In this document: positions 6,174-64,000 of the stretch, one piece after another | Layout: the number at the start of each line of letters is the position of its first letter | Position numbering within the stretch: position 1 is the first letter of the stretch | Origin: Sminthopsis crassicaudata | Taxonomy: Eukaryota | Direction of reading: 5' to 3' | DNA length: 64,000 nucleotides | NCBI RefSeq assembly: GCF_048593235.1 | Contig: NC_133620.1 | Coordinates: forward strand, 452,939,261-453,003,260 | Made by a program: the position numbers and the translations under genes | The notes under the pieces: model-generated | The model's database searches: none | What the model was told of the DNA's origin: nothing | The model's input: the letters and a program-made list of their open reading frames with translations, nothing else

Positions 6174-9100
6174 GCTTTTTTGATTCTGTCCTGAAAGAGA
6201 AGGTATAAAATTATCAGACTTATAGCAGAAAGGGACCAAAAGATAGGTCTAGGATTTCCAAGGTCTGAAATGGGATTTGCCAACATCTCATAATCTTGGG
6301 GGAGTCTTGCTAAGCCTAAAAAGATGTCTTAGAGACTTTCTGTTTCTCACTCTGATTTATCAATCTTCTAAGACTAGTAAGAGACTATTGAATATGAATG
6401 TGTACTCAGTTCAAATTGGGACAAATTATAGAAAGATTATTTTTAAAAATCACTTTCTCCATGATAATTAGAAGAGAAAGATATAAGTCTAAATGACTAC
6501 CCTTGACACCTCAGTTTTAAAGACATACACGTAATTCCCTTAGCCAGCTGAGAATGAGATGCTGCCAACAAATATGAGAGCAGCTTCTGTCGAGCTCATA
6601 TGGAGCTGAACCACATTCATCAGGGGTATTTTTATTAGAAATGTGACATCTCTGAGTTTGGGGTTGGAAAGAAAAGGAGTAAAGGCCTTTCCAATTATCC
6701 ACACACCTTTTTAAATGATGAACTTAATACATTGCAGAAAAGCCTTGGTCTAGCTGATTAATTAATTCTTGGAAGACATAAGCATAAAGATTTGGCAAGC
6801 CAAAGGGAACATCTCATCCATGTGTGGATCTCCCCAGTAACTGAGAAACGTTGTGACTTCCTAGACAGATGTCTGTCTGCTCATACTGTAAAGCCAACTG
6901 ATACTCAACACTGAGCCAAGGCCTCGTGCTTGCCTTATACCAGGAAATCCCATCAATGCTTAGTCTAGCAATTTCCTTAGTTGTCAATCATCTTGTCAAT
7001 CTGTTCTAAATATCAGTCCTTCCCGAATCCAGTAAAGCTGAAATTGTACTAAAAAGAACGAGTGAGCAAGCAGAAGAAATTCTATGAAAATCATTTTTGC
7101 ATATACCTCAAACCCACCTACCCAGTGACCTTTCCTTTGTGATGTGTATGTAGCACCATGGGTAGCTCTCTGTCACATATGAAACCTTCAGAATAGCTAC
7201 CCCATATTCAAAGTATGGTATGGCTTCTTATGCACTCACAATGATAGTTTACGAGCCTCTACTGGTTGTTTTTGGTTTTGTTTTGTTTTGTTATTTTACT
7301 TTTTCATTAATCAGCTAAAGGAAAAATACTATTCAAAGCAAAAGCATTGTTTTTAATGGTAGAGAAAGATGATTTGTAATAAAAAAAAAAAAACTTCCTC
7401 CCCACCCCCTGAAAAAACCCAAACAACCCTTGGGCATGTTCTCCTAAAAATAAGCACTGAAGGGTGTAATCCTGCACAGTGATTCCTCCGATGCTGCAGA
7501 ACCAGTAAGGATTCTTGCTGATGTCATCATCTCTCTTCTTGCTGATCACAACGTCCCCTTGGGGCTTGGCTGGTCTTATCCCCAGCTTGGCTATTCTTTT
7601 ACTCCCTGGTATTCCTGCTGGGTAAATAGTGTCTTTTGGGCCTGGCAAGCACCGATTTTAGCCTGCTAACATTCAGGGATTGTAACCTCTCTGGGATAAG
7701 GGCCATCTAATAACACTTTAGTAATAGTCACCACACCCAATTAACAAAAGCTAAGCCTCTGTCCCTAAACTAAGGTCTTTCCCTTTTGGCCCTTATTTCT
7801 TTGCAGAAGATCAAAGTCTTCTATTGCAGATAAGTACCAAGATCCTTTCTGGTTTAGTTGCAAATGTATTTGAGTCAGGAAAAAAATAACTTAAGGAAGC
7901 ACTGCCTGTGCTCTCTGGGATGCCAGCACCCTCCCTATCTTTAATATGCACATATGTCAGCAGCAAGGACCATAATGCTTTTGTGCTATATTTTGCTCAG
8001 GGAAAAGCCTTAGTCTCACTACAGAAGAACTAAATGACAAGCCAAGCATGGTTAATAGCATATAGAACATTTTGCATCTATTCATCCCCCACCTCTCCAA
8101 GAAAAGCAGGAAGATGGAATAATTTTTAACCATCATTTGACACACATAGTATATGGAGAAAGCAAAATTGGATCTTTTTTTTTTTTTTTTACCCTCAGAC
8201 TGAAAACTAAGCATCATGACAGCTCATGTTTATTCATTGTGCTGCAGTAATCATAGGATCATAGATTTAAAGTGGGAAGAAAGCACAGAAATCATCAAGT
8301 CCCTCCTGTTCATTTGTAGAAAGATCTGAGGGGCAAAGAAAGCAAATAACTTGAACAAGGTTGCCCAGGTAGCAAAAGTGACCCTATCTATCCTATATCC
8401 AGATTTTTTTCCTCTATATCATCCCCCAAATTTCACTTAGAATTTTATGATAGAAAATGAATCTGTCCCATGATATAAAAACTCAGCCTCTTGGAGGAAG
8501 GTCTAGAATGCCCAAGATCAGAAATAGGTTTTGCCTTTATTTCATAGTTGCTGGCAAGCCTGGGCTGAACCTAGAAACATCTCTGAGATATTTTTTGCTT
8601 TAACTCCTGGCTTATTGGAGCCTTATGCAATATTGTACTGAGTTTGGGAGCTGTTTTTTTCTCTTAGTATGTTTGCTAGCTGTTCTTAGAGAAATGTTAC
8701 ATTATACGCAGGGATAGAGGAAAGGAACCAGGAGATAAAATTGAAGATGAAAAGAGAGAAGGGAATCATTAAAGAAAGAAGGTTGCCAATGAGAGTTAAA
8801 TGGAACGGAGCCTTAGACTCAAGTCTGGGCATTTGCTTAAGACCTGCCTCATTGGTTGAAAGAATGATGCCTACATATTCTATCTTCTTAGGAGACAGAG
8901 CTGGTGAGAGTATGGAGAGAGGGTTTTAATTCTGTGTATGGCAGGAAAGAGAAAAAAATTTGGGGAAAAGCCAACATGTAGAGGAACCTTGAACGTGTCC
9001 CTATTTCCAGCTTACTGCATCGTAAACTTGGAGGAATTTCTTCTGAGATAGCTCACCCCCAGGGAGAGAGAACTAATTCACTCTTTATTGGCTGGAATAT

Positions 9101-54646: not shown

Positions 54647-55532
54647 GGACTTGGGCCACGGAGGAATTGACATTGCTAACTATGCAGATTGTGTTTTTTA
54701 TTTTAAGAATTTTAGCAAGTAAATGCTTGGTAATTGAAAAAAAAATCTCAAAATTTGTACCATTTAGGTCTGAGGTCCCACAGCCCCACTAATCCTAAAT
54801 ATGGAACCTAGTTTAAAAAGCTGTAGCCATGGAGACCGGCAACTCAGTCATATCAGTCTCGTGTAGAAAAAGGCCTGGCAGACTTGGTGTCAGGAGAGGT
54901 TGACATTAGATTCCCCTGCCTTGGGTTTTCTAGTTATACAAACCTGGACAAGTCACTGAAACTTTGTGCCTCAGTTTACTTATCTGCAAAATGTAGATAG
55001 TAATATTTGAACAATCTTTCCCAAGACCCTCAAGCCAAATTCAACTTTTTGGCATGTGAACTCTTCAGTGTTCTCTCAGATTCTAGGTCACAGGGGAGAT
55101 GTTGACCTGGGTTGGGAGAGGGATTTACCTTCATCCATAAAATGACAGGTCCAGTCCCTAATCCTATATCATAGAAAAGTGACCTGCTTCTACTACTACT
55201 ATGTAACCCTCCACTGGCTGGATCTCAGTTTTCCTAGCCACAGAATAGAGTTAATAATGCTTAGCCTCTCTTTACCTCATAGGAATGAAGATAATAAAAG
55301 TAGTAACTGATCTTGGATTATCACTAATAATCACAGCTACTGAGTAGCCTCTGGGTGTTGTCATAGTAATGACAAATTTTAAGCTACCCAGGGAACTATG
55401 ACTCTCTAAGGAGGTTTTCATCATCAGGATGTGGGTGATTTCCCTTAGTAGAAAACTGGAGAATAATTGCTGTTGAGAATTTCATCTTTCTGGGTAACCA
55501 ATTAATTGGTGATTTCCTTTGACAATTTTCAG

Positions 55533-55592
55533 AAACTAGAGACAAAGTCTGTGAGCCCAGGAGCCAGCTAATAGAAGGAAAGCCATGGTCAG
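55533..55592 (+). CDS. EFCAB5: EFCAB5 exon, 60 nt (ETRDKVCEPRSQLIEGKPWS)
   Basis: gacaattttcag acceptor and CAG|gtgact donor; matches human KDKPCEPKSQKIEGKSWS; too short for the ORF track. Confidence 0.9.
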
Positions 55593-55714
55593 GTGACTCT
55601 ACCTTTAATTCTCCCTTCCTTTGTCCCTTGACACACACACTTACATTGGGTGACAGAGATGTTGGGAAAGGAGTTACGGAATTGTCTTTATTCTGGTCTT
55701 CTGTGTTCTTCCAG

Positions 55715-55807
55715 GTGAACTCTTAACTTCTGATCTGGCCAAGAACTATATGAATTATGGAGAAAACAAAGAGGCTTATTTAGTCTCCGAAGATCCCAGG
55801 TTTGCAG
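55715..55807 (+). CDS. EFCAB5: EFCAB5 exon, 93 nt (GELLTSDLAKNYMNYGENKEAYLVSEDPRFA)
   Basis: ctgtgttcttccag acceptor and CAG|gtactt donor; corresponds to human GEFFT...GNSRFT. Confidence 0.9.
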
Positions 55808-56561
55808 GTACTTGATGACACTGAGTCCAGGATGATATGAATGGCAACTCAATGGACAAATGGGCTAGTAGACTAACTCTGATTACTGTGTGAACTCATT
55901 TTCAGGGGCTGACCAGCCCCTCTCCCCCCTCCTTCCTCCACAAGTAGTAAAAACAAAGCCCTGTGACCTTTTCTTCTCACCTGATTGCATATGGGTCTTG
56001 GTGGCATTCAAGATTACTAACACAAGATACCCACCTACTCCTCTCAAACATTAAGAGTGTGTCAGGGGGAGAAATCACATCATGGGCCAAATGCTTTAGG
56101 AACTTTTTGTGTGTATCTGTGTTTTGTAAGTTTAGGCTAGAAGCAACATGGCAGAGTGAAGAGAGAACCAGCCTTAAGAGTCAGGGAGAACTGAGTTTAA
56201 ATCCAGCCTCAGACACTTACAGGCTGTGTGACCCTGAGCTAGTTGCTTAATCCTGATTGCCACAAAGGAAAAATAAATACTAAATTCTCTTGGGGATCAA
56301 AAAAAGTAAAAACCTGGTTCTGCCCTCAAGGAGTTCAAAGAAAAGATGCTAATCTATATTGGTAGAAGAAGTTTCCTCACATAGGAATGTTAATGAGAAC
56401 ACAGGAAAGGAAATAACAGATCAAACCACAAAACTCTATAAATGGATTACTATTAGTCTTAGTCCTATTCTTGATTAGCTGCCCACATGGCATCCAGTAT
56501 TTGCCTCATGTTTTGGGGGATTTCTCTCCTGATTACCTAACTTCTGTTTCCTGCTAACCAG

Positions 56562-56776
56562 AGCTGCGTCCAATAATCCTCAGAATTCTGAACCAGGAAG
56601 AGTCAAATATAAGGAGCCCCTTTACCCAGAACTACCTCACTGTGACACAGTTTGTTCAGCTCATGGAGACATTTGTGGGGGAAGGTGTCTCCACTGGGAT
56701 TATGAAGAAGTTCATCAACTTTATAAAGAAGAATTACGTGGAAACACAGGAAGAAAAAATCAACCAGCTGGAGAAG
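56562..56776 (+). CDS. EFCAB5: EFCAB5 exon, 215 nt (ELRPIILRIL...QFVQLMETFVGE...EEKINQLEK)
   Basis: tttcctgctaaccag acceptor and AAG|gtaagt donor; aligns to human QFVQLLETFVGE...YVETEQEK. Confidence 0.95.
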
Positions 56777-57316
56777 GTAAGTTGTGCTAAAAGCCCCGGC
56801 AGAGACCAAAGTTTTGAGGACAAACACTATCATCCCAGGTCTTGCTGGATTTTATTTCTTCTTTTTTTGTTATGGTTGATCTTTTTACCTTCTTCCTCTC
56901 CCCCAGAGTTTGTCACTTTATTTCCACATTTTTTCAACAAGCAGGTCCTCTGAGTCACTGCAAGTCCCTCTCACTCCAGAGTCCCTCTCAACTTGAAAAC
57001 TGTAGTCCTAGGATGATTAAGGGGAACATTCATTTATATGTGTGTGAGGTTTTCATTCATTGAGATCCCCATGTTATAAGTAATAATAATGATGATAGCT
57101 AGAAAGTTTGCAAAAAACTCTATGTATATTAACTTCCTGAACCTTGTACCAATCTTATGAGGTAGGTTCTGTTATTATCCCCATTTTATAGAAGAGGAAA
57201 CCAAGACTGAGAGAGAGAACTTGCCTAGGATCACCCAGCTAGCGGGTATCTGAGGCTGGATTCCTGACTCCAAATCTAACATTACACCCACAACACAACT
57301 AACAAAGTCACAAGTC

Positions 57317-57363
<47 letters not shown>

Positions 57364-58858
57364 GCTTTTTATTTACAAGATATATGCATGGGTAATTTTT
57401 CAGCATTGACCCTTGCAAAACCTTCTGTTCCAACTTTTTCCCCTCCTTCCCCCATCCTCTCCCCCAGATGGCAGGTAGACCAATACACGTTAAATATGTT
57501 AAAGTATAAGTTAAATACAATGTATGTATACATGTTCGTATAGTTATTTTGCTGCACAAAAAGAATCGGACTTTGAAATAGTGTACAATTTGCCTGTGAA
57601 GGAAATAAAAAATGCAGGCAGACAAAAATATAGGGATTGGGAATTCTATGTAGTGGTTCATAGTCATCTCCCAGAGTTCTTTCACTGGGTGTAGCTGGTT
57701 CAGTTCATTACTGCTCTATTGGAACTGATTTGGTTCATCTCATTGCTGGAGAGGGCCTCGTCCATCAGAATTGATCATCATAGAGTATTGTTGTTGAAGT
57801 ATACAACGATCTCCTGGTCCTACTCATTTCACTCAGCATCAGTTCCTGTAAGTCTCTCCAGGACACTCTGAAATCATCCTGCTGGTCATTTCTTACAGAA
57901 CAATAATATTCCATAACATTCATATACCATGATTTATTCAGCCATTCTCCAATTGATGGGCATCCACTCAGTTTCCAGTTTCTGGCCATTACAAAGAGGG
58001 CTGCCACAAACATTCTTGCACTTGTGGGTCCCTTTCCCTTCTTTAAAATCTCTTTGGGATATAATCCCAGTAGTAACACTGCTGGGTCAAAGGGTATACA
58101 CAGTTTGATAATTTTTTGAGCCTAGTTCCAAATCGTTCTCCAAAATGGCTGGATGTATTCACAATTCACCCACAATGTATCAGTGTCCTAGTTTTCCCAC
58201 ATTCCCTCTAACATTCATCGTTATTTGTTCCTGTCATTTTAGCCAATCTGAGAGGTGTGTAGTGGTATCTCAGAGTTGTCTTAATTTGCATTTCTCTGAT
58301 TACTAATTACTTGGAACATCTTTTCATATGTCTACAGATGGTTTCAATTTCTTCGTCTGAGAATTGTCTGTTCATATCCTTTGACCACTTATCAATTGGA
58401 GAATGGCTTGATTTCTTATAAATTAGAGTCAATTCTCTATATTTTGGAACATTTGACTATAAAAATGCTTTCCCAGTTTATTGTTTCCTTTCTAATCTTG
58501 TCTGCAATAGTTTTGTTTGTACAAAAACTTTTCAATTTAATATAATCAAAATTTGTGATCAATAATGATCTTTAGTTCTTCTTTGGTCATAAATTCCTTC
58601 CTCTTCCACAAGTCTGAGAGGTAAACTATCCTATGTTCTTCTAATTTATTTATAATCTCATTCTCTATGCCTAGGTCATGAACCCATTTCGACCTTACTT
58701 TGGCATATGATGTTAAGTGTGGGTCAATGCCTACTTTCTGCCATACTAATTTCCAATTTTTCCAGCAATTTTTGTCAAACAATGAGTTCTTATCCCAAAA
58801 GCTGGGGGTCTTTGGGTTTGTCAAACACTAGATTATTAAAGTTATTGACTATTTTGTC
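57317..58858 (-). mobile_element. L1 3' fragment (1.5 kb) with (TTA)n tail
   Basis: 14-bp TSD caaagtcacaagtc at 57303-57316 and 58859-58872; ORF2 peptides (FDKNCWKNWKLVWQK; ARMFVAALFVMARNWK). Confidence 0.93.
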
Positions 58859-59869
58859 CAAAGTCACAAGTCCTGACCCCTTCCCCCACCCAAAAGCCTC
58901 TCATCACATGACAGTGACATGGTCACTCATCCCACTGTATCTCAGCCCGTCCACTCACCCCCAAAGGTTGCTGCTGGCCAGAAAATGTCAGAGTTGTTCC
59001 TGTGGTACTCTTTGTCTGTTTGGCCCGAGAGAATGCCCTTGTGGCAGTTGCATGGCATTGTGGGAAGTGTGCTAGAACCAGAGTCAGGAAGACCTTTGCC
59101 AGCTGGGACACCCACGGAGAGACACACCAGGTTACTTAATGGAAGTACTTCCACTCATCTCTAATTAAATGTAAAATGATGACATCTAGGCCCAAGTATT
59201 TGAGAAAATGGTTGCTCCTTACCAGCCAAAGTTGTGAGAGAAGGCCCCAAACTCAAAGGTTTACTGAGCTCAGGGCTCCAAATCATCTATAAGCCCGGAA
59301 CTTTTGTGAGTTTAAGTATTTCCATCAAGCGACTTGTATCATCAGATTCTTTATTATATAGGGAATATGGTCCTCTTCCCACACTTTGTTGTTGTGCGAT
59401 CATTTTTCAGTTATGTCTAACTCTCTATGACCCCATTTGGATTTTCTTGGCAGAGGTATTGGAGTGGTTTGTCATTTCCTTCTCCAGCTCCTTTTACAGA
59501 TGAGGAAACTGAGGCAAATCGCCCAAAGTCACACACTTAGTAAGTGTCTGAGGCTGGATTTGAATTCTGTTTTCCTAACTTCAGGTCCTGTCCATGGCTC
59601 TGTCCACACCTTGATCCACGGCTATCTGGGTTCTAATCCAATAGAAAGATTTATGTATGCTGCTTTCCCCTTTGAGTGTAAATTCCTTAAAGACAGGGAC
59701 TGTTTCTGCCTCCTTTGTGTCCTCGGGCTATTAGTACAAGGCTCCACACATAATAAGCCCTCGATAAAGGCTTGTGGTTTGTTTGATTGATTGCTACAGT
59801 CCCTGATTTTCATCTTGTGGGAGCAACAGTGAATGGCAATCATTTTCCTACTCAGAGATTTAAGTTCAT

Positions 59870-60029
59870 TTTCTCTTTCTCTCTCTGTGTCTTTCTGTCT
59901 CTGTCTCTCTGTGTCTTTCTCTGTCTTTTCTCTCTCTGTGTCTCTGTGTCTATCTCTGTCTCTCTGTCTCTGTCTCTCTCTGTTTCTATCTCTGTTTCTG
60001 TCTCTCTGTATCTCTCTCTTTGTGTCTGT
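59870..60029. repeat. (TGTCTC)-rich pyrimidine repeat running into the assembly gap
   Basis: Direct reading. Confidence 0.93.
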
Positions 60030-60742
60030 NNNNNNNNNNNNNNNNNNNNNNNNNNNNNNNNNNNNNNNNNNNNNNNNNNNNNNNNNNNNNNNNNNNNNNN
60101 NNNNNNNNNNNNNNNNNNNNNNNNNNNNNNNNNNNNNNNNNNNNNNNNNNNNNNNNNNNNNNNNNNNNNNNNNNNNNNNNNNNNNNNNNNNNNNNNNNNN
60201 NNNNNNNNNNNNNNNNNNNNNNNNNNNNNNNNNNNNNNNNNNNNNNNNNNNNNNNNNNNNNNNNNNNNNNNNNNNNNNNNNNNNNNNNNNNNNNNNNNNN
60301 NNNNNNNNNNNNNNNNNNNNNNNNNNNNNNNNNNNNNNNNNNNNNNNNNNNNNNNNNNNNNNNNNNNNNNNNNNNNNNNNNNNNNNNNNNNNNNNNNNNN
60401 NNNNNNNNNNNNNNNNNNNNNNNNNNNNNNNNNNNNNNNNNNNNNNNNNNNNNNNNNNNNNNNNNNNNNNNNNNNNNNNNNNNNNNNNNNNNNNNNNNNN
60501 NNNNNNNNNNNNNNNNNNNNNNNNNNNNNNNNNNNNNNNNNNNNNNNNNNNNNNNNNNNNNNNNNNNNNNNNNNNNNNNNNNNNNNNNNNNNNNNNNNNN
60601 NNNNNNNNNNNNNNNNNNNNNNNNNNNNNNNNNNNNNNNNNNNNNNNNNNNNNNNNNNNNNNNNNNNNNNNNNNNNNNNNNNNNNNNNNNNNNNNNNNNN
60701 NNNNNNNNNNNNNNNNNNNNNNNNNNNNNNNNNNNNNNNNNN
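60030..60742. other. Assembly gap (713 N)
   Basis: Direct reading. Confidence 0.99.
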
Positions 60743-62260
60743 TCCCTCACTTTAGCCCCCTCCTATCTGACTACCCCCCTCTGGGGGTCCCTCATGCACC
60801 CTCATGGGTGTCCCGGGGTTCTGGGCTGGAGCCCTGTCTCCTTTCGCCCCCTTGGCGGTCTCACGGGCTCCCGTGGGTTCCTTTGTCCTTCCGTGCCGAT
60901 GAGCTCCGAGCCTCCAGTCCGAGTCTCCCGAGAATTCCCACAGGCGGGATGCCCCCCGGGCAGCTCAGACTCAGCGCTGCCCGCGCTCCCCGCTCCCGGA
61001 CCAGGGCCCCGCTGTCCCCCCGCAGTTCCCGTCCCCCAGGCTCAGACCCGTCCTCAGCCGTCCTCCCCAGCCGGGAGCCGGACTCCCCACATCCTTTCTC
61101 CGTCTCCCACCGCCCCCTTCTCTCCTTTGCTCAGGCCCTGTCTTTCCTGGATAACTGCAGGAGCCTCCCATCCCCCATCGGATCCCCCTCCACGCAGCTC
61201 CCCAAAGGTTTTCCTGCTCGGTCTGACCACGGCACCCCCTCCCCCTCCCCCAGTCCCAGGGGCTCCCGGTGGCCTCCGGCGTCCCGCGGAGCATCTGCAC
61301 TTCGTGTTCTGGCAGAAGCCGGTTTCCTCCCGCCCTTTACACCCGACTCTCCCCTCCCCCCCACCTCCGGCCTGCCCCTCAGACACAACATTCCCCCCTC
61401 CCTCCTTGTCTCCGGTCGACCCCCCCCCCCCCCCCCGCGCGCCCTTCCCCCCCCCTCCCGTTGCGCCCAGTTCTGGCCCTTCCGAGATCCAGTGAAACCG
61501 GGCTTCTCGGAGGCCCCTCCTTACTACCTGCCTTGTACTCCCGCCAGGGGGCGCCATCGCGCGGAAAGACTCACCTCCATGAGCCGGGTCCCACCTCGCA
61601 CTTGCACTGAGTGACCCTGGGCAAGTCACTTCCCCCGTTGGCCTGTGCTTCCTCTTCTATAAACCGGGGACGGAAAAGAATACGGCTGCACGATCCTTTG
61701 TTGTGTTTGAAGCAATAGCAAGGGCGCCGGGGAGATCCGCAGCTGCGCAATCGTGGTTTTATTGTATGCGTTTGGGGAATCTTTGTTTTGTTCCATAAAT
61801 TAAAAATACAATAAAATGTTAAATTAAAAAAACAAACTAGAGAAGGCCCTTATAAATCCCTCTAGTTTCTTTGCCAAGAAAGCCCCAACGGGGTCACGAA
61901 ACATTGGAAATGACTGAAGAATGATGTAGTGACTTACGAGCGGTTTCCCATCAGGAGGTGAGCTCCCTGAGGCCCAGGGCCGCTGCCCCCCCCCCCTCCG
62001 GTGTCCTCCGCGCGGCGCTCGTCCGGCTGCATCCAGCTCTCCGGGAGCCCTCGGACAGCACTGACCAGGGCTTTTCTTGGCAAAGGTGCCGGAGTGACGG
62101 CGTTCCCTTTCGCGGTGCAGGGACCTGGCCCACAGCTGGCGTCCGAGGCCCGAGCTGAGCCAGGCCTCCCCGCCCAAAGGTCCCAGGCTGTGCCCGCGGA
62201 ACCCTCCTGCTCTGCCTGCAACCCAGCAAGCGCTTAACGCATCTCTTCTGCCTGGTGTCA
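60743..62260. promoter_or_regulatory. Intragenic CpG island
   Basis: Very GC-rich with dense CpG against a CpG-depleted, AT-rich window; left edge hidden in the gap. Confidence 0.85.
61541..61554 (+). promoter_or_regulatory. CTCF core motif CCGCCAGGGGGCGC
   Basis: Full match to the CTCF consensus, CpGs intact, inside the CpG island. Confidence 0.65.
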
Positions 62261-62614
62261 TTTATTAAGTGCCTACTATGTGCTGGAAGCACACGGTCCC
62301 TGGGGACAAAAACCTCTCCTCAGGGAGCTTACGTTCTATTGGGGGAGAAAACGCATGCTTAGTACATACGTACATAAATATGTAAATGTCAAATGTAGCG
62401 ATAGAGAATGGACCCATAATTCCCAGGGAAATCCTGGGAGAAAATAACACACTCAGTAAGAATGTGTTGGCCATTTCTAATCTTAGAGAGGAAGTTGGAG
62501 GTGGAGCGCTGAGACTAAGTGAGTTCCTTGGGTTCCCCACTAGAACATATCACAGGAAGGACTTGAACTTGGGTTTTCCTGGCACCAAACCCAGCTTTCT
62601 ATAGACCAAATATG

Positions 62615-63135
62615 GCATAAAAATATATCTATAATATATATATTATATATGACATAATGATATATACATTATTATACATTATACAATATTAACTTATGGA
62701 TTTATTTTATATAGATAATATATATTTTTCTATTGAATTATATAATTTATATGTTAATATATGTGTATATGTTTATATATAATTTATATGTAAATTATAA
62801 TTTTTTATTTTAAATATAAAATGAAAATAACTAATAGTATTATATATAATGTTTTTTATTTTATAATTATAAAATTTTTTTGACAGTGTATATGCATGAG
62901 TAATTTTTTATAACATTATCCCTTGTATTTATATAATGTAATATACAACATAATAACATAAAGATTAATTTATTTTATATCAATTACATAAAATATATTG
63001 TATAATTAGTATGAATTATTATGCTATGATATTTAATTGCACAATACACAATATCATATAAAATGCATAATGTATAAATTATATAATTTATTTTATTACA
63101 TAATTTAATTAAATATATTTAAAATAAATATAAAG
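62615..63135. repeat. AT-rich low-complexity tract with an embedded short L1 3' tail (about 62850-62930, minus)
   Basis: Direct reading; tgacagtgtatatgcatgagtaattttttataacattatcccttgta matches the 12933 L1 end. Confidence 0.85.
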
Positions 63136-63245
63136 ATATCTCTTGGTGTCATGCTCCAGCCTGAGGTGAAGTCATCTGTGTAAAAGACAAGTGAGTTACA
63201 GGGAGTTAAGCCTTTCCATCTTTTGCAATCCTCCTTGCTTCCTAG

Positions 63246-63440
<195 letters not shown>

Positions 63441-64000
63441 TAATGGATCTAGACAACAACCAGTTGCACTGGACTTTTCCTGGTCACAGTAATGGGTCCC
63501 CTACACAGGAAAAACACCGGTGGTTGTGGGTGAGATGGATCATAGAAAAATACAATTCAGTGTAAGCTTGAGTTGATGATTAGGCTAAATCCAAGTGTCT
63601 GCCTAAATAATCTGATTCAATAATCAGATTAATTATTTCTCAAAGAAATTCAGTCCCCTTTTTCTTGGCTTATAAAAGTATATAAGATCTCAGAGGTTGT
63701 CGTATCATAGATCTAGAATTGGAAAGACTTTAGAGTCCAATCTTCTTTTTTCACGGTTGAGGTAACTGGGGCAAATAAATTAAGTGACTTGCCCAAGGTC
63801 ACACAACTAGCCAATGCTTGAGGCAGGATTTAGTACTGATAAATAAGAGTTTAATTTAATATCCAGTTTAATCCTTTAATTTAATAATCCTGGAAATCGA
63901 TGCTATATTGTTATTGCCCTTTTATACTTTAAAAAACCAAGGAGTAATTTGTCCAAGATCACAAGCCAGTAGGTGTTGAAGGCAGGCTAGGAACCCAAAA

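What the first reader, a model, noticed from the sequence alone, without database searches (positions are those of the whole stretch)
60743..62260. Intragenic CpG island with signatures of an antisense promoter nested in EFCAB5
Seen: about 1.5 kb of dense CpG deep inside a CpG-poor gene. 60743-61560 is strongly C-rich on plus (G-rich on minus, with long G runs). Two strong minus-strand donors occur: ATG GAG|GTGAGT (intron from 61574) and CGCTC|GTAAGT (intron from 61937, ending an open frame MQPDERRAEDTGGGGG...LMGNR). Known: CpG-island promoters show G-skew on the coding strand downstream of the start site and G-rich first introns. Inference: an unannotated minus-strand transcript starts at about 61.6-62.2 kb, runs antisense through the EFCAB5 exons, and may regulate them. 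I do not recall such an island in human EFCAB5 and could not identify downstream exons.
Basis: partly seen in the sequence, partly recalled or inferred. Interest (0 to 1): 0.7.

Follow-up and report, generated by a model that had tools for sequence, protein, structure and literature searches.

The report
Orphan CpG island in EFCAB5 intron
A real CpG island of about 1.5 kb sits in one intron of the marsupial EFCAB5 gene, has the same layout in the Tasmanian devil and is absent from a cat, but nothing here shows that it starts an antisense RNA, and the splice sites and small reading frame offered as signs of one are chance features.

Summary
The island is real. Window 60743-62260 has GC 0.63 and CpG o/e 0.67, against 0.39 and 0.17 for the window. 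It holds 95 of the window's 409 CpGs.

It lies in the 6.5 kb EFCAB5 intron before the EF-hand exon (63246-63403, + strand). It has three parts:
- a C-rich arm, G-rich on the minus strand, with four G-quadruplex motifs;
- a SINE-derived centre;
- a second CpG-rich arm.

The Tasmanian devil has an island in the same intron with almost the same three-part composition, so misassembly is excluded. The orthologous lynx intron has none.

Only one donor (61574) is strong, and about 0.3 such sites per strand are expected in 1.5 kb. The other donor (61937) is ordinary, and a near-equal donor lies on the plus strand. Neither minus-strand donor, nor the 32-codon frame, is kept in the devil.

No RNA evidence could be obtained: the single read-laying run was lost to a filter.

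My best reading is an ordinary orphan intragenic CpG island, most likely kept unmethylated in the germline, and possibly a weak minus-strand or bidirectional non-coding promoter. Its likely start is near 61.56-61.6 kb, where a conserved CTCF/YY1-like block meets the onset of the G-skew. The scan has noted many similar orphan islands elsewhere in this genome.

The parts
60743..62260 (.). CpG island as seen: GC 0.63, CpG o/e 0.67, 95 CpG
   Evidence: orthologous island at devil L001 ~7480-9010 (broadly 7200-9100)
60743..61560 (-). Skewed arm A. It is G-rich on the minus strand (plus-strand skew -0.37) and 68% pyrimidine on the plus strand. Four minus-strand G4 motifs lie at 61007-61037, 61235-61267, 61329-61362 and 61420-61468.
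   Evidence: devil equivalent 7480-8255 has GC 0.69, o/e 0.64, skew -0.37 and four minus-strand G4 motifs; alignable with the devil in blocks at 0.80-0.85 identity
61541..61558 (+). CTCF-like motif CCGCCAGGGGGCGCC (14 of 15 of CCASYAGRKGGCRSY), overlapping a GCCAT (YY1-type) core that reads GATGGCGCC on the minus strand. It sits at the point where the G-skew begins.
   Evidence: 2 matches in the window, 0.16 expected; devil has CCGCTAGGGGGCGCCATCGCGCG at the same place. Conservation there is not above the neutral level, and no binding was tested.
61570..61925 (+). Centre B: old SINE-derived sequence (MIR core / MAR1-like tail), GC 0.46 but CpG o/e 0.81, with a nested A-tailed insert of about 165 bp at 61676-61839
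   Evidence: 61829-61925 aligns to an in-window MAR1-like copy, score 47 against a shuffle maximum of 26; family name from my own recognition of the motifs; shared with the devil
61931..62260 (.). Arm C: GC 0.68, o/e 0.66, little skew. It holds a MAR1-like piece in minus orientation at about 62069-62096 and a GC box TGGGCGGGG at 62168-62176 (minus).
   Evidence: not alignable with the devil above shuffles, although the devil has a CpG-rich arm there (8591-9010, o/e 0.88)
61573..61580 (-).
   Evidence: the devil reads ACGAGT on the minus strand, with no GT
61936..62032 (-).
   Evidence: the region is not conserved in the devil
61955..61963 (+). Plus-strand donor GAG|GTGAGC (score 9.8), which could in principle join to the EF-hand exon; not conserved in the devil
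60030..60742 (.). Assembly gap (713 N) bounding the island, preceded by a CT-rich microsatellite at 59870-60027
   Evidence: not filled
56561..56779 (+). EFCAB5 exon (devil residues 773-845) that closes the intron on the left
63246..63403 (+). EFCAB5 EF-hand exon (devil residues 845-898) that closes the intron on the right

Best explanation
Shown: this is a genuine orphan CpG island inside an EFCAB5 intron. It has three parts: a G-skewed arm, a SINE-derived centre and a second CpG-rich arm. The Tasmanian devil has the same three parts in the same place, and the lynx has nothing comparable.

Inferred: CpG o/e of 0.65-0.9 persists in both lineages, even inside old SINE sequence, while the surrounding intron sits at about 0.2. 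The island is therefore most likely kept free of germline methylation. As with many orphan islands, the likeliest reason is that it is an unannotated, weak or tissue-restricted promoter.

If it fires, composition favours the minus strand or both strands. The likely start is near 61.56-61.6 kb, just upstream of the conserved GATGGCGCC/CTCF-like block. Transcription would then run into the G-rich, G4- and R-loop-prone arm and give a non-coding RNA antisense to EFCAB5.

They are chance features of one lineage.
For: - Island statistics.
- Host gene and intron.
- Orthologous devil island with matching parts: A 776 bp, GC 0.69, o/e 0.64, skew -0.37, four minus-strand G4 motifs; B with skew near 0; C CpG-rich. 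The window values are 818 bp, 0.69, 0.63, -0.37 and four G4 motifs.
- Collinear flanks on both sides, which excludes misassembly.
- CpG sites in alignable island blocks are shared between the species about twice as often as in the flanks (24 of 71 against 13 of 74, Fisher p = 0.035).
- The SINE-derived centre keeps o/e 0.8-1.0.
- GC boxes and a CTCF/YY1-like block lie at the skew onset and are present in both species.
- No protein-family or protein-database match for any island frame, which fits a non-coding element.
- Literature: about half of mammalian CpG islands are orphans, and many show transcription initiation (PMC2944787). G-skew downstream of the start marks unmethylated, R-loop-forming island promoters (PMC3787257).
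Against: - There is no transcript, cap, chromatin or methylation evidence of any kind. No holder run is on record as RNA.
- No splice donor on either strand is conserved.
- Alignable island blocks are no better conserved than neutral intron (0.80-0.85 against 0.86-0.93), and about a third of the island does not align at all. Nothing points to sequence-level constraint.
- The two species are close, so shared composition is partly simple inheritance.
- Only 34% of CpG sites are shared, so turnover is fast.
- G-richness may simply reflect a polypurine/polypyrimidine low-complexity tract: a CT microsatellite lies next to it, and the devil has a tandem repeat of about 21 bp.
Confidence: 0.45

Rival explanations
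1. The island is a by-product with no promoter role. In this view it is a GC-rich, indel-prone low-complexity tract plus SINE fragments, driven to high GC and CpG by GC-biased gene conversion at a stable recombination hotspot or by a local mutational bias.
For: - It evolves faster than its flanks: global identity 0.66 against 0.84-0.92.
- About a third of it does not align with the devil.
- Its boundaries move: the devil island runs about 470 bp further left, and 15 of the devil CpGs there are TG/CA in the window.
- Tandem-repeat expansion in the devil and a CT microsatellite beside the gap.
- By eye, SINE sequence inside the island has gained G/C at sites that are not CpG.
Against: - Gene conversion alone does not keep CpG o/e at 0.65-0.9 if the DNA is methylated.
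- The three-part composition and the position of the skew onset are the same in two lineages.
- CpG sites are shared more often than in the flanks.
Confidence: 0.25
2. The island is a sense-strand alternative promoter that gives a short C-terminal EFCAB5 isoform starting at the EF-hand exon. An in-frame ATG lies at 63267.
For: - The island lies 1-2.5 kb upstream of the EF-hand exon.
- There is a plus-strand donor at 61958 scoring 9.8.
- TATA-like CTATAAA on the plus strand at about 61660 is present in both species.
- Residues 845-1513 form the EFCAB5_C domain half.
Against: - The plus-strand donor is not conserved in the devil.
- The plus strand has no G-skew downstream.
- The devil 646-aa model that starts in this exon is explained by a 2-nt frameshift in that assembly, not by a start site.
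- No short marsupial isoform appeared among proteins of 355-1130 aa.
Confidence: 0.12
3. The island is a regulatory element without a stable transcript of its own, such as a CTCF-bound boundary, a Polycomb-target island or an enhancer within the gene body.
For: - A CTCF-like motif (14 of 15), one of two in 64 kb, is present in both species.
- Orphan islands are often developmentally methylated or Polycomb-marked (PMC2944787 and PMC3787257, abstracts).
Against: - There is a single motif with one mismatch.
- 22 of 23 conserved bases has a probability of about 0.1 at the local neutral identity (my calculation).
- The motif probably derives from the SINE head.
- One CTCF site does not explain a 1.5-2 kb island.
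Confidence: 0.12
4. The island is a marsupial-specific imprinted germline differentially methylated region that drives an antisense lncRNA through EFCAB5, in the manner of Airn or ALID.
For: - It is an intronic CpG island found in marsupials, lacking in the one placental checked, with G-rich and repeat-bearing sequence.
- Marsupial precedents exist: ALID in an IGF2R intron (PMC6162910) and PRKACB (PMC11438212), from the abstracts.
Against: - EFCAB5, NSRP1 and SSH2 do not appear in the held supplements of three marsupial imprinting screens.
- There are no allele-specific data.
- The prior for any one orphan island is low.
Confidence: 0.04
5. The island is an assembly artefact: GC-rich sequence from another locus placed next to a gap.
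For: The island begins exactly at the edge of a 713-N gap.
Against: - It is contiguous, without N, with the EF-hand exon on its right.
- A gap-free devil assembly has the orthologous island between the same flanks in the same order and orientation.
- Runs from several studies hold parts of the stretch.
Confidence: 0.02

Closest known systems
Orphan (intragenic) CpG islands, Illingworth et al. 2010 (PMC2944787)
   Same: It is a CpG island remote from any annotated gene start, inside a gene body, at a conserved location relative to exons in a related species, and promoter-like in composition.
   Different: Membership of the functional class (unmethylated, H3K4me3, initiation) was not tested here. 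The island is absent from the one placental checked and is partly built from SINE sequence.
GC-skewed, R-loop-forming CpG-island promoters, Ginno et al. 2013 (PMC3787257)
   Same: It has about 0.8 kb of strong G-over-C skew (0.37) on one strand with a sharp onset, and G4 motifs on that strand only.
   Different: No start site is known, so whether the skew lies downstream of one is an assumption. The skew could equally be a polypurine/polypyrimidine tract.
Intronic island promoters of antisense lncRNAs at imprinted genes: Airn in mouse Igf2r and ALID in marsupial IGF2R (PMC6162910); intragenic differentially methylated island of marsupial PRKACB (PMC11438212)
   Same: It is an intronic CpG island in a marsupial gene, and the candidate transcription is antisense to the host gene.
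   Different: There is no evidence of differential methylation, of a transcript or of monoallelic expression. EFCAB5 is not in the held lists of marsupial imprinting screens.
SINE-borne CTCF sites (known from my own knowledge in rodents, dogs and opossum; not checked in a paper here)
   Same: The CTCF-like motif lies where the head of the SINE-derived segment would be.
   Different: It is a single motif, its origin from the SINE is only plausible by eye, and no binding data exist.

Membership tests
CpG island (sequence definition: at least 200 bp, GC at least 0.5, o/e at least 0.6) | Length, GC content and observed/expected CpG | tested here: met
   1518 bp, GC 0.632, o/e 0.67. Nearly every 200-bp sub-window passes.
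Orphan CpG island with promoter activity | Remote from annotated gene starts | tested here: met
   It lies in the intron between exons 56561-56779 and 63246-63403. The only devil gene model that starts nearby is a frameshift artefact. Non-coding annotation could not be consulted.
Orphan CpG island with promoter activity | Unmethylated DNA, H3K4me3 or polymerase II, and transcription initiation | not testable with these tools
   The read-laying run was lost. No holder run is on record as RNA.
Orphan CpG island with promoter activity | Conserved location relative to genes in another species | tested here: met
   The devil has it in the same intron with the same layout. It is not present in the lynx.
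GC-skewed R-loop-type island promoter | Positive GC skew on the coding strand starting at the start site | tested here: inconclusive
   Skew of +0.37 on the minus strand over 60743-61560, with onset at about 61560, is conserved in the devil. The start site is unknown.
   Chance-level frequency. Neither donor is kept in the devil.
   No Pfam match. No database relatives for the two long island frames. Arm C does not align with the devil above shuffles.
Imprinted intronic differentially methylated region with antisense lncRNA | Allele-specific germline methylation and a monoallelic antisense transcript | not testable with these tools
   Only negative literature look-ups.
CTCF binding site | Match to the core motif | tested here: met
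   14 of 15 positions at 61541-61555. There are 2 matches in the window against 0.16 expected. The devil keeps it with a permitted C-to-T change.
CTCF binding site | Occupancy | not testable with these tools
   No ChIP data are available.

The most novel reading that the evidence does not exclude
The island is a marsupial-specific germline differentially methylated region. Its minus-strand promoter would drive a long antisense RNA across the upstream EFCAB5 exons, making EFCAB5 (or its neighbours NSRP1 or SSH2) a new marsupial imprinted locus built on exapted SINE sequence with a CTCF/YY1-type element.
Probability: 0.04. Interest if true: 0.7.

Novelty: new member of a known kind. Interest (0 to 1): 0.3.

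Why it matters
If it is active, the island would mark an unannotated, lineage-specific transcription unit or regulatory element inside a testis and cilia-type gene. It would be one more example of marsupial CpG islands arising over SINE sequence. As it stands, it is one of many orphan intragenic islands in this genome. Its practical value is as a well-delimited, two-species-conserved candidate for CAGE and methylome data. It is also a caution that isolated splice-donor matches and short frames in GC-rich DNA carry no weight.

Tried and rejected
After that, no letters of 63775-63815 were sent to any search; my scripts masked them.
- Rfam and tRNA scans of 58-64 kb found nothing.
- Pfam on six island frames gave nothing meaningful.
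- Exact look-ups of island frames and of the exon frame in the contig index found nothing on record.
- Word-index protein searches with the 289-aa plus frame and the 191-aa minus frame of arm A gave no hit. This route to transcript or orthologous contigs failed.
- A third protein search, with the devil C-terminal model, looked for short isoforms or partial models in other marsupials. It found only placentals, birds and frogs in that length range.
- Two short Logan contigs carrying the EF-hand exon (L002, L003) are about 1 kb, come from unknown species and cannot reach the island. They were not analysed further.
- The Tupaia model is not on record.
- Literature: no paper links EFCAB5 with an antisense RNA or island in marsupials. 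Three imprinting screens do not list it.
- Self-comparison showed that arms A and C are not copies of any other sequence in the window. A young interspersed repeat is not supported within 64 kb.
- Rejected: reading the devil's 646-aa gene model as evidence of an internal promoter. It stems from a frameshift in that assembly.
- Not attempted: polarising substitutions to test gene conversion, because no outgroup sequence was obtainable.
The gap was not filled.

Full report
OBSERVATION. The stretch 60743-62260 is a genuine CpG island. It is 1518 bp long with GC 0.632, 95 CpG and observed/expected 0.67. The whole window has GC 0.388, 409 CpGs and o/e 0.17. Almost every 200-bp sub-window passes the usual thresholds. 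The only other places in 64 kb that do are a short element at about 22.0-22.3 kb and one window at 50.5 kb. The island starts at the right edge of a 713-N gap (60030-60742), which is preceded by a CT-rich microsatellite at 59870-60027.

HOST GENE AND INTRON. The exon at 63246-63403 (+) has a weak EF-hand match. Searched by reference as a single exon, it hits Tasmanian devil EFCAB5 at 92% identity, residues 845-896 of 1502. A tblastn of the devil protein maps ten EFCAB5 exons on the plus strand of the window. The island lies in the intron between 56561-56779 and 63246-63403.

ANATOMY. The island has three parts.
- Arm A (60743-61560) has GC 0.69 and o/e 0.63. Its plus strand is 47% C and 22% G (skew -0.37) and 68% pyrimidine. 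It has C runs of 17, 9 and 7, and four of the window's eight minus-strand G-quadruplex motifs, with none on the plus strand there.
- Centre B (61561-61930) has GC 0.46 but o/e 0.81 and is SINE-derived. The core GTGACCCTGGGCAAGTCACTT matches four other SINE copies in the window. Positions 61829-61925 align to an in-window MAR1-like copy far above shuffled controls (score 47 against a maximum of 26). An A-tailed insert of about 165 bp is nested in it. The family names are my own recognition of the motifs.
- Arm C (61931-62260) has GC 0.68, o/e 0.66 and little skew. It also contains a MAR1-like piece, in the opposite orientation (about 62069-62096; score 31 against a maximum of 24).

Arms A and C match nothing else in the window. 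At the A/B boundary, exactly where the skew begins, lies CCGCCAGGGGGCGCCATCGCG. This is a 14-of-15 match to the CTCF core, one of two in the window where 0.16 are expected. It overlaps a GCCAT core that reads GATGGCGCC on the minus strand, a YY1-type motif by my own knowledge. GC boxes occur in both arms.

All coordinates are correct. I scored every GT in the window on both strands with a simple nine-position donor matrix. The results:
- 61574 (GAG|GTGAGT) scores 11.3. Sites scoring 10 or more occur 23 times in the window, or 0.18 per kb per strand, so 0.28 are expected per strand in the island.
- 61937 (CTC|GTAAGT) scores 5.9, in a class that occurs about twice per kb per strand.
- A plus-strand donor at 61958 (GAG|GTGAGC) scores 9.8.

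The donors therefore neither exceed chance nor favour one strand. The first lies in the SINE-derived centre and the second at the start of arm C, beside a short SINE-like inverted-repeat match. The 32-codon frame is unremarkable in 68% GC DNA. No island frame matches Pfam or any protein in two large searches.

COMPARISON WITH THE TASMANIAN DEVIL. A partial devil gene model (646 aa) allowed 64 kb of a gap-free devil assembly to be fetched (L001).
- The flanks are collinear: window 55000-57318, 58859-59857 and 62342-63774 match L001 4159-6504, 6489-7469 and 9014-10450 at 0.86-0.93 identity.
- Between those flanks the devil has an island with the same three parts. The A-equivalent (7480-8255) is 776 bp with GC 0.69, o/e 0.64, skew -0.37 and four minus-strand G4 motifs. 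The B-equivalent has skew 0.02 and o/e 0.81. The C-equivalent has GC 0.67 and o/e 0.88.
- This excludes misassembly.
- Arm A is as long in the window as in the devil, and its first bases align next to the devil's short CT run. This suggests, as an inference only, that little of the island is hidden in the gap.
- Sequence conservation is poor. Alignable blocks reach 0.77-0.85 identity, at or below the neutral flanks. Arm C does not align above shuffled controls.
- The devil carries a fourfold tandem repeat of about 21 bp in arm A. Its island also extends about 470 bp further left, over a SINE, where the window species has TG/CA at 15 of the devil's CpGs.
- CpG sites in alignable island blocks are shared about twice as often as in the flanks (24 of 71 against 13 of 74; Fisher p = 0.035). 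That is still far below the conservation of other bases.
- The CTCF/YY1-like block is kept (CCGCTAGGGGGCGCCATCGCGCG). However, 22 of 23 identical bases is not significant at the local identity (p about 0.1, my calculation).
- None of the donors is kept. On the minus strand the devil reads ACGAGT at donor 1 and CAG|GTCACT at donor 2, and it has no GT at the plus-strand donor.

COMPARISON WITH A PLACENTAL. The orthologous lynx intron (L004 17774-24480) has GC 0.42, 50 CpGs and o/e 0.17. Its only CpG-rich piece is a pair of carnivore SINEs at 18.9-19.3 kb, and it shows no similarity to the island. On this sample of one placental, the island is lineage-specific.

EXPRESSION. Nothing could be learned.
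- Ten runs hold parts of 60743-63420, but none is on record as RNA, and the library types are unknown.
- Small assemblies holding 30-40% of the stretch could mean RNA, enriched libraries or chance. I draw nothing from them.

INTERPRETATION. What is shown is a real orphan CpG island whose position and architecture are conserved in a second marsupial and which the one placental checked lacks. It is partly SINE-derived and non-coding. What is inferred is long-term protection from germline methylation, because CpG o/e of 0.65-0.9 persists in two lineages and inside old SINE sequence while the rest of the intron is at about 0.2.

The commonest known reason for such protection is promoter activity. 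About half of mammalian islands are orphans, and many initiate transcription (PMC2944787). The conserved G-skew and G4 arm matches the R-loop-type architecture downstream of island start sites (PMC3787257). This would put a start on the minus strand near 61.56-61.6 kb, next to the conserved GATGGCGCC block. I give this reading about 0.45.

The main rival, at about 0.25, is a fast-evolving GC-rich tract maintained by biased gene conversion or local mutational bias without any promoter role. The rapid divergence, the indels and the shifting boundaries favour it. The remaining rivals are:
- a sense alternative promoter for a C-terminal EFCAB5 isoform (0.12);
- a CTCF, Polycomb or enhancer element (0.12);
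- an imprinted differentially methylated region with an antisense RNA (0.04);
- misassembly (0.02).

COMPARISON WITH WHAT IS KNOWN, AND VERDICT. This is a new member of a known kind, the orphan intragenic CpG island. The scan has already noted many of these elsewhere in this same genome. The splice-donor and reading-frame support is chance-level and not conserved. The antisense-transcript idea remains untested. I score interest at 0.3.

- The N gap was not filled or looked up.
- L002 and L003, short Logan contigs of unknown species, were fetched but not analysed.

Noticed in passing
L001:9935-10093 (devil EF-hand exon) against window 63246-63403: In devil assembly GCA_048593225.1 the exon is 2 nt shorter around L001 10010-10025, which shifts the frame. 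This explains why EFCAB5 is split there and why a 646-aa model (KAM9003513.1) starts at an ATG inside the exon. It is either an assembly error or a real variant, and it is not a start site.
   Followed up: partly
L001:22200-24300: The devil has a second intragenic CpG island of about 2 kb, overlapping the EFCAB5 exons for residues 900-1049. It lies beyond the right end of the window. The lynx has none at the corresponding exons.
   Followed up: no
window 57332-58859: A repeat insertion of about 1.5 kb in the same intron is absent from the orthologous devil site. It matches L001 60107-62178 in reverse orientation at 75-85%, so it is probably a LINE fragment.
   Followed up: no
window 61676-61839: An insert of about 165 bp with an A-rich tail is nested inside the SINE of the island centre and is shared with the devil. 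It has no Rfam match and its origin is unknown.
   Followed up: partly
window 62620-63135; L001 9280-9820: A 0.5 kb AT-rich low-complexity tract lies just upstream of the EF-hand exon and is present in both species.
   Followed up: no
window 59400-59857; L001 7000-7470: The SINE left of the island is CpG-rich in the devil (33 CpG) but CpG-poor in the window species (10 CpG, with TG/CA at 15 of the devil's sites). The island boundary has moved in one lineage.
   Followed up: partly
L001:7870-7975: The devil-specific fourfold tandem repeat (unit about 21 bp, CCCCACCGGATCCAGCCTCCC) lies inside the skewed arm. The window has one copy at about 61170-61190.
   Followed up: no
window 33237-33251 (-): This is the only other CTCF-core match in the window (CCACCAGGGGGCATC, one mismatch).
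   Followed up: no
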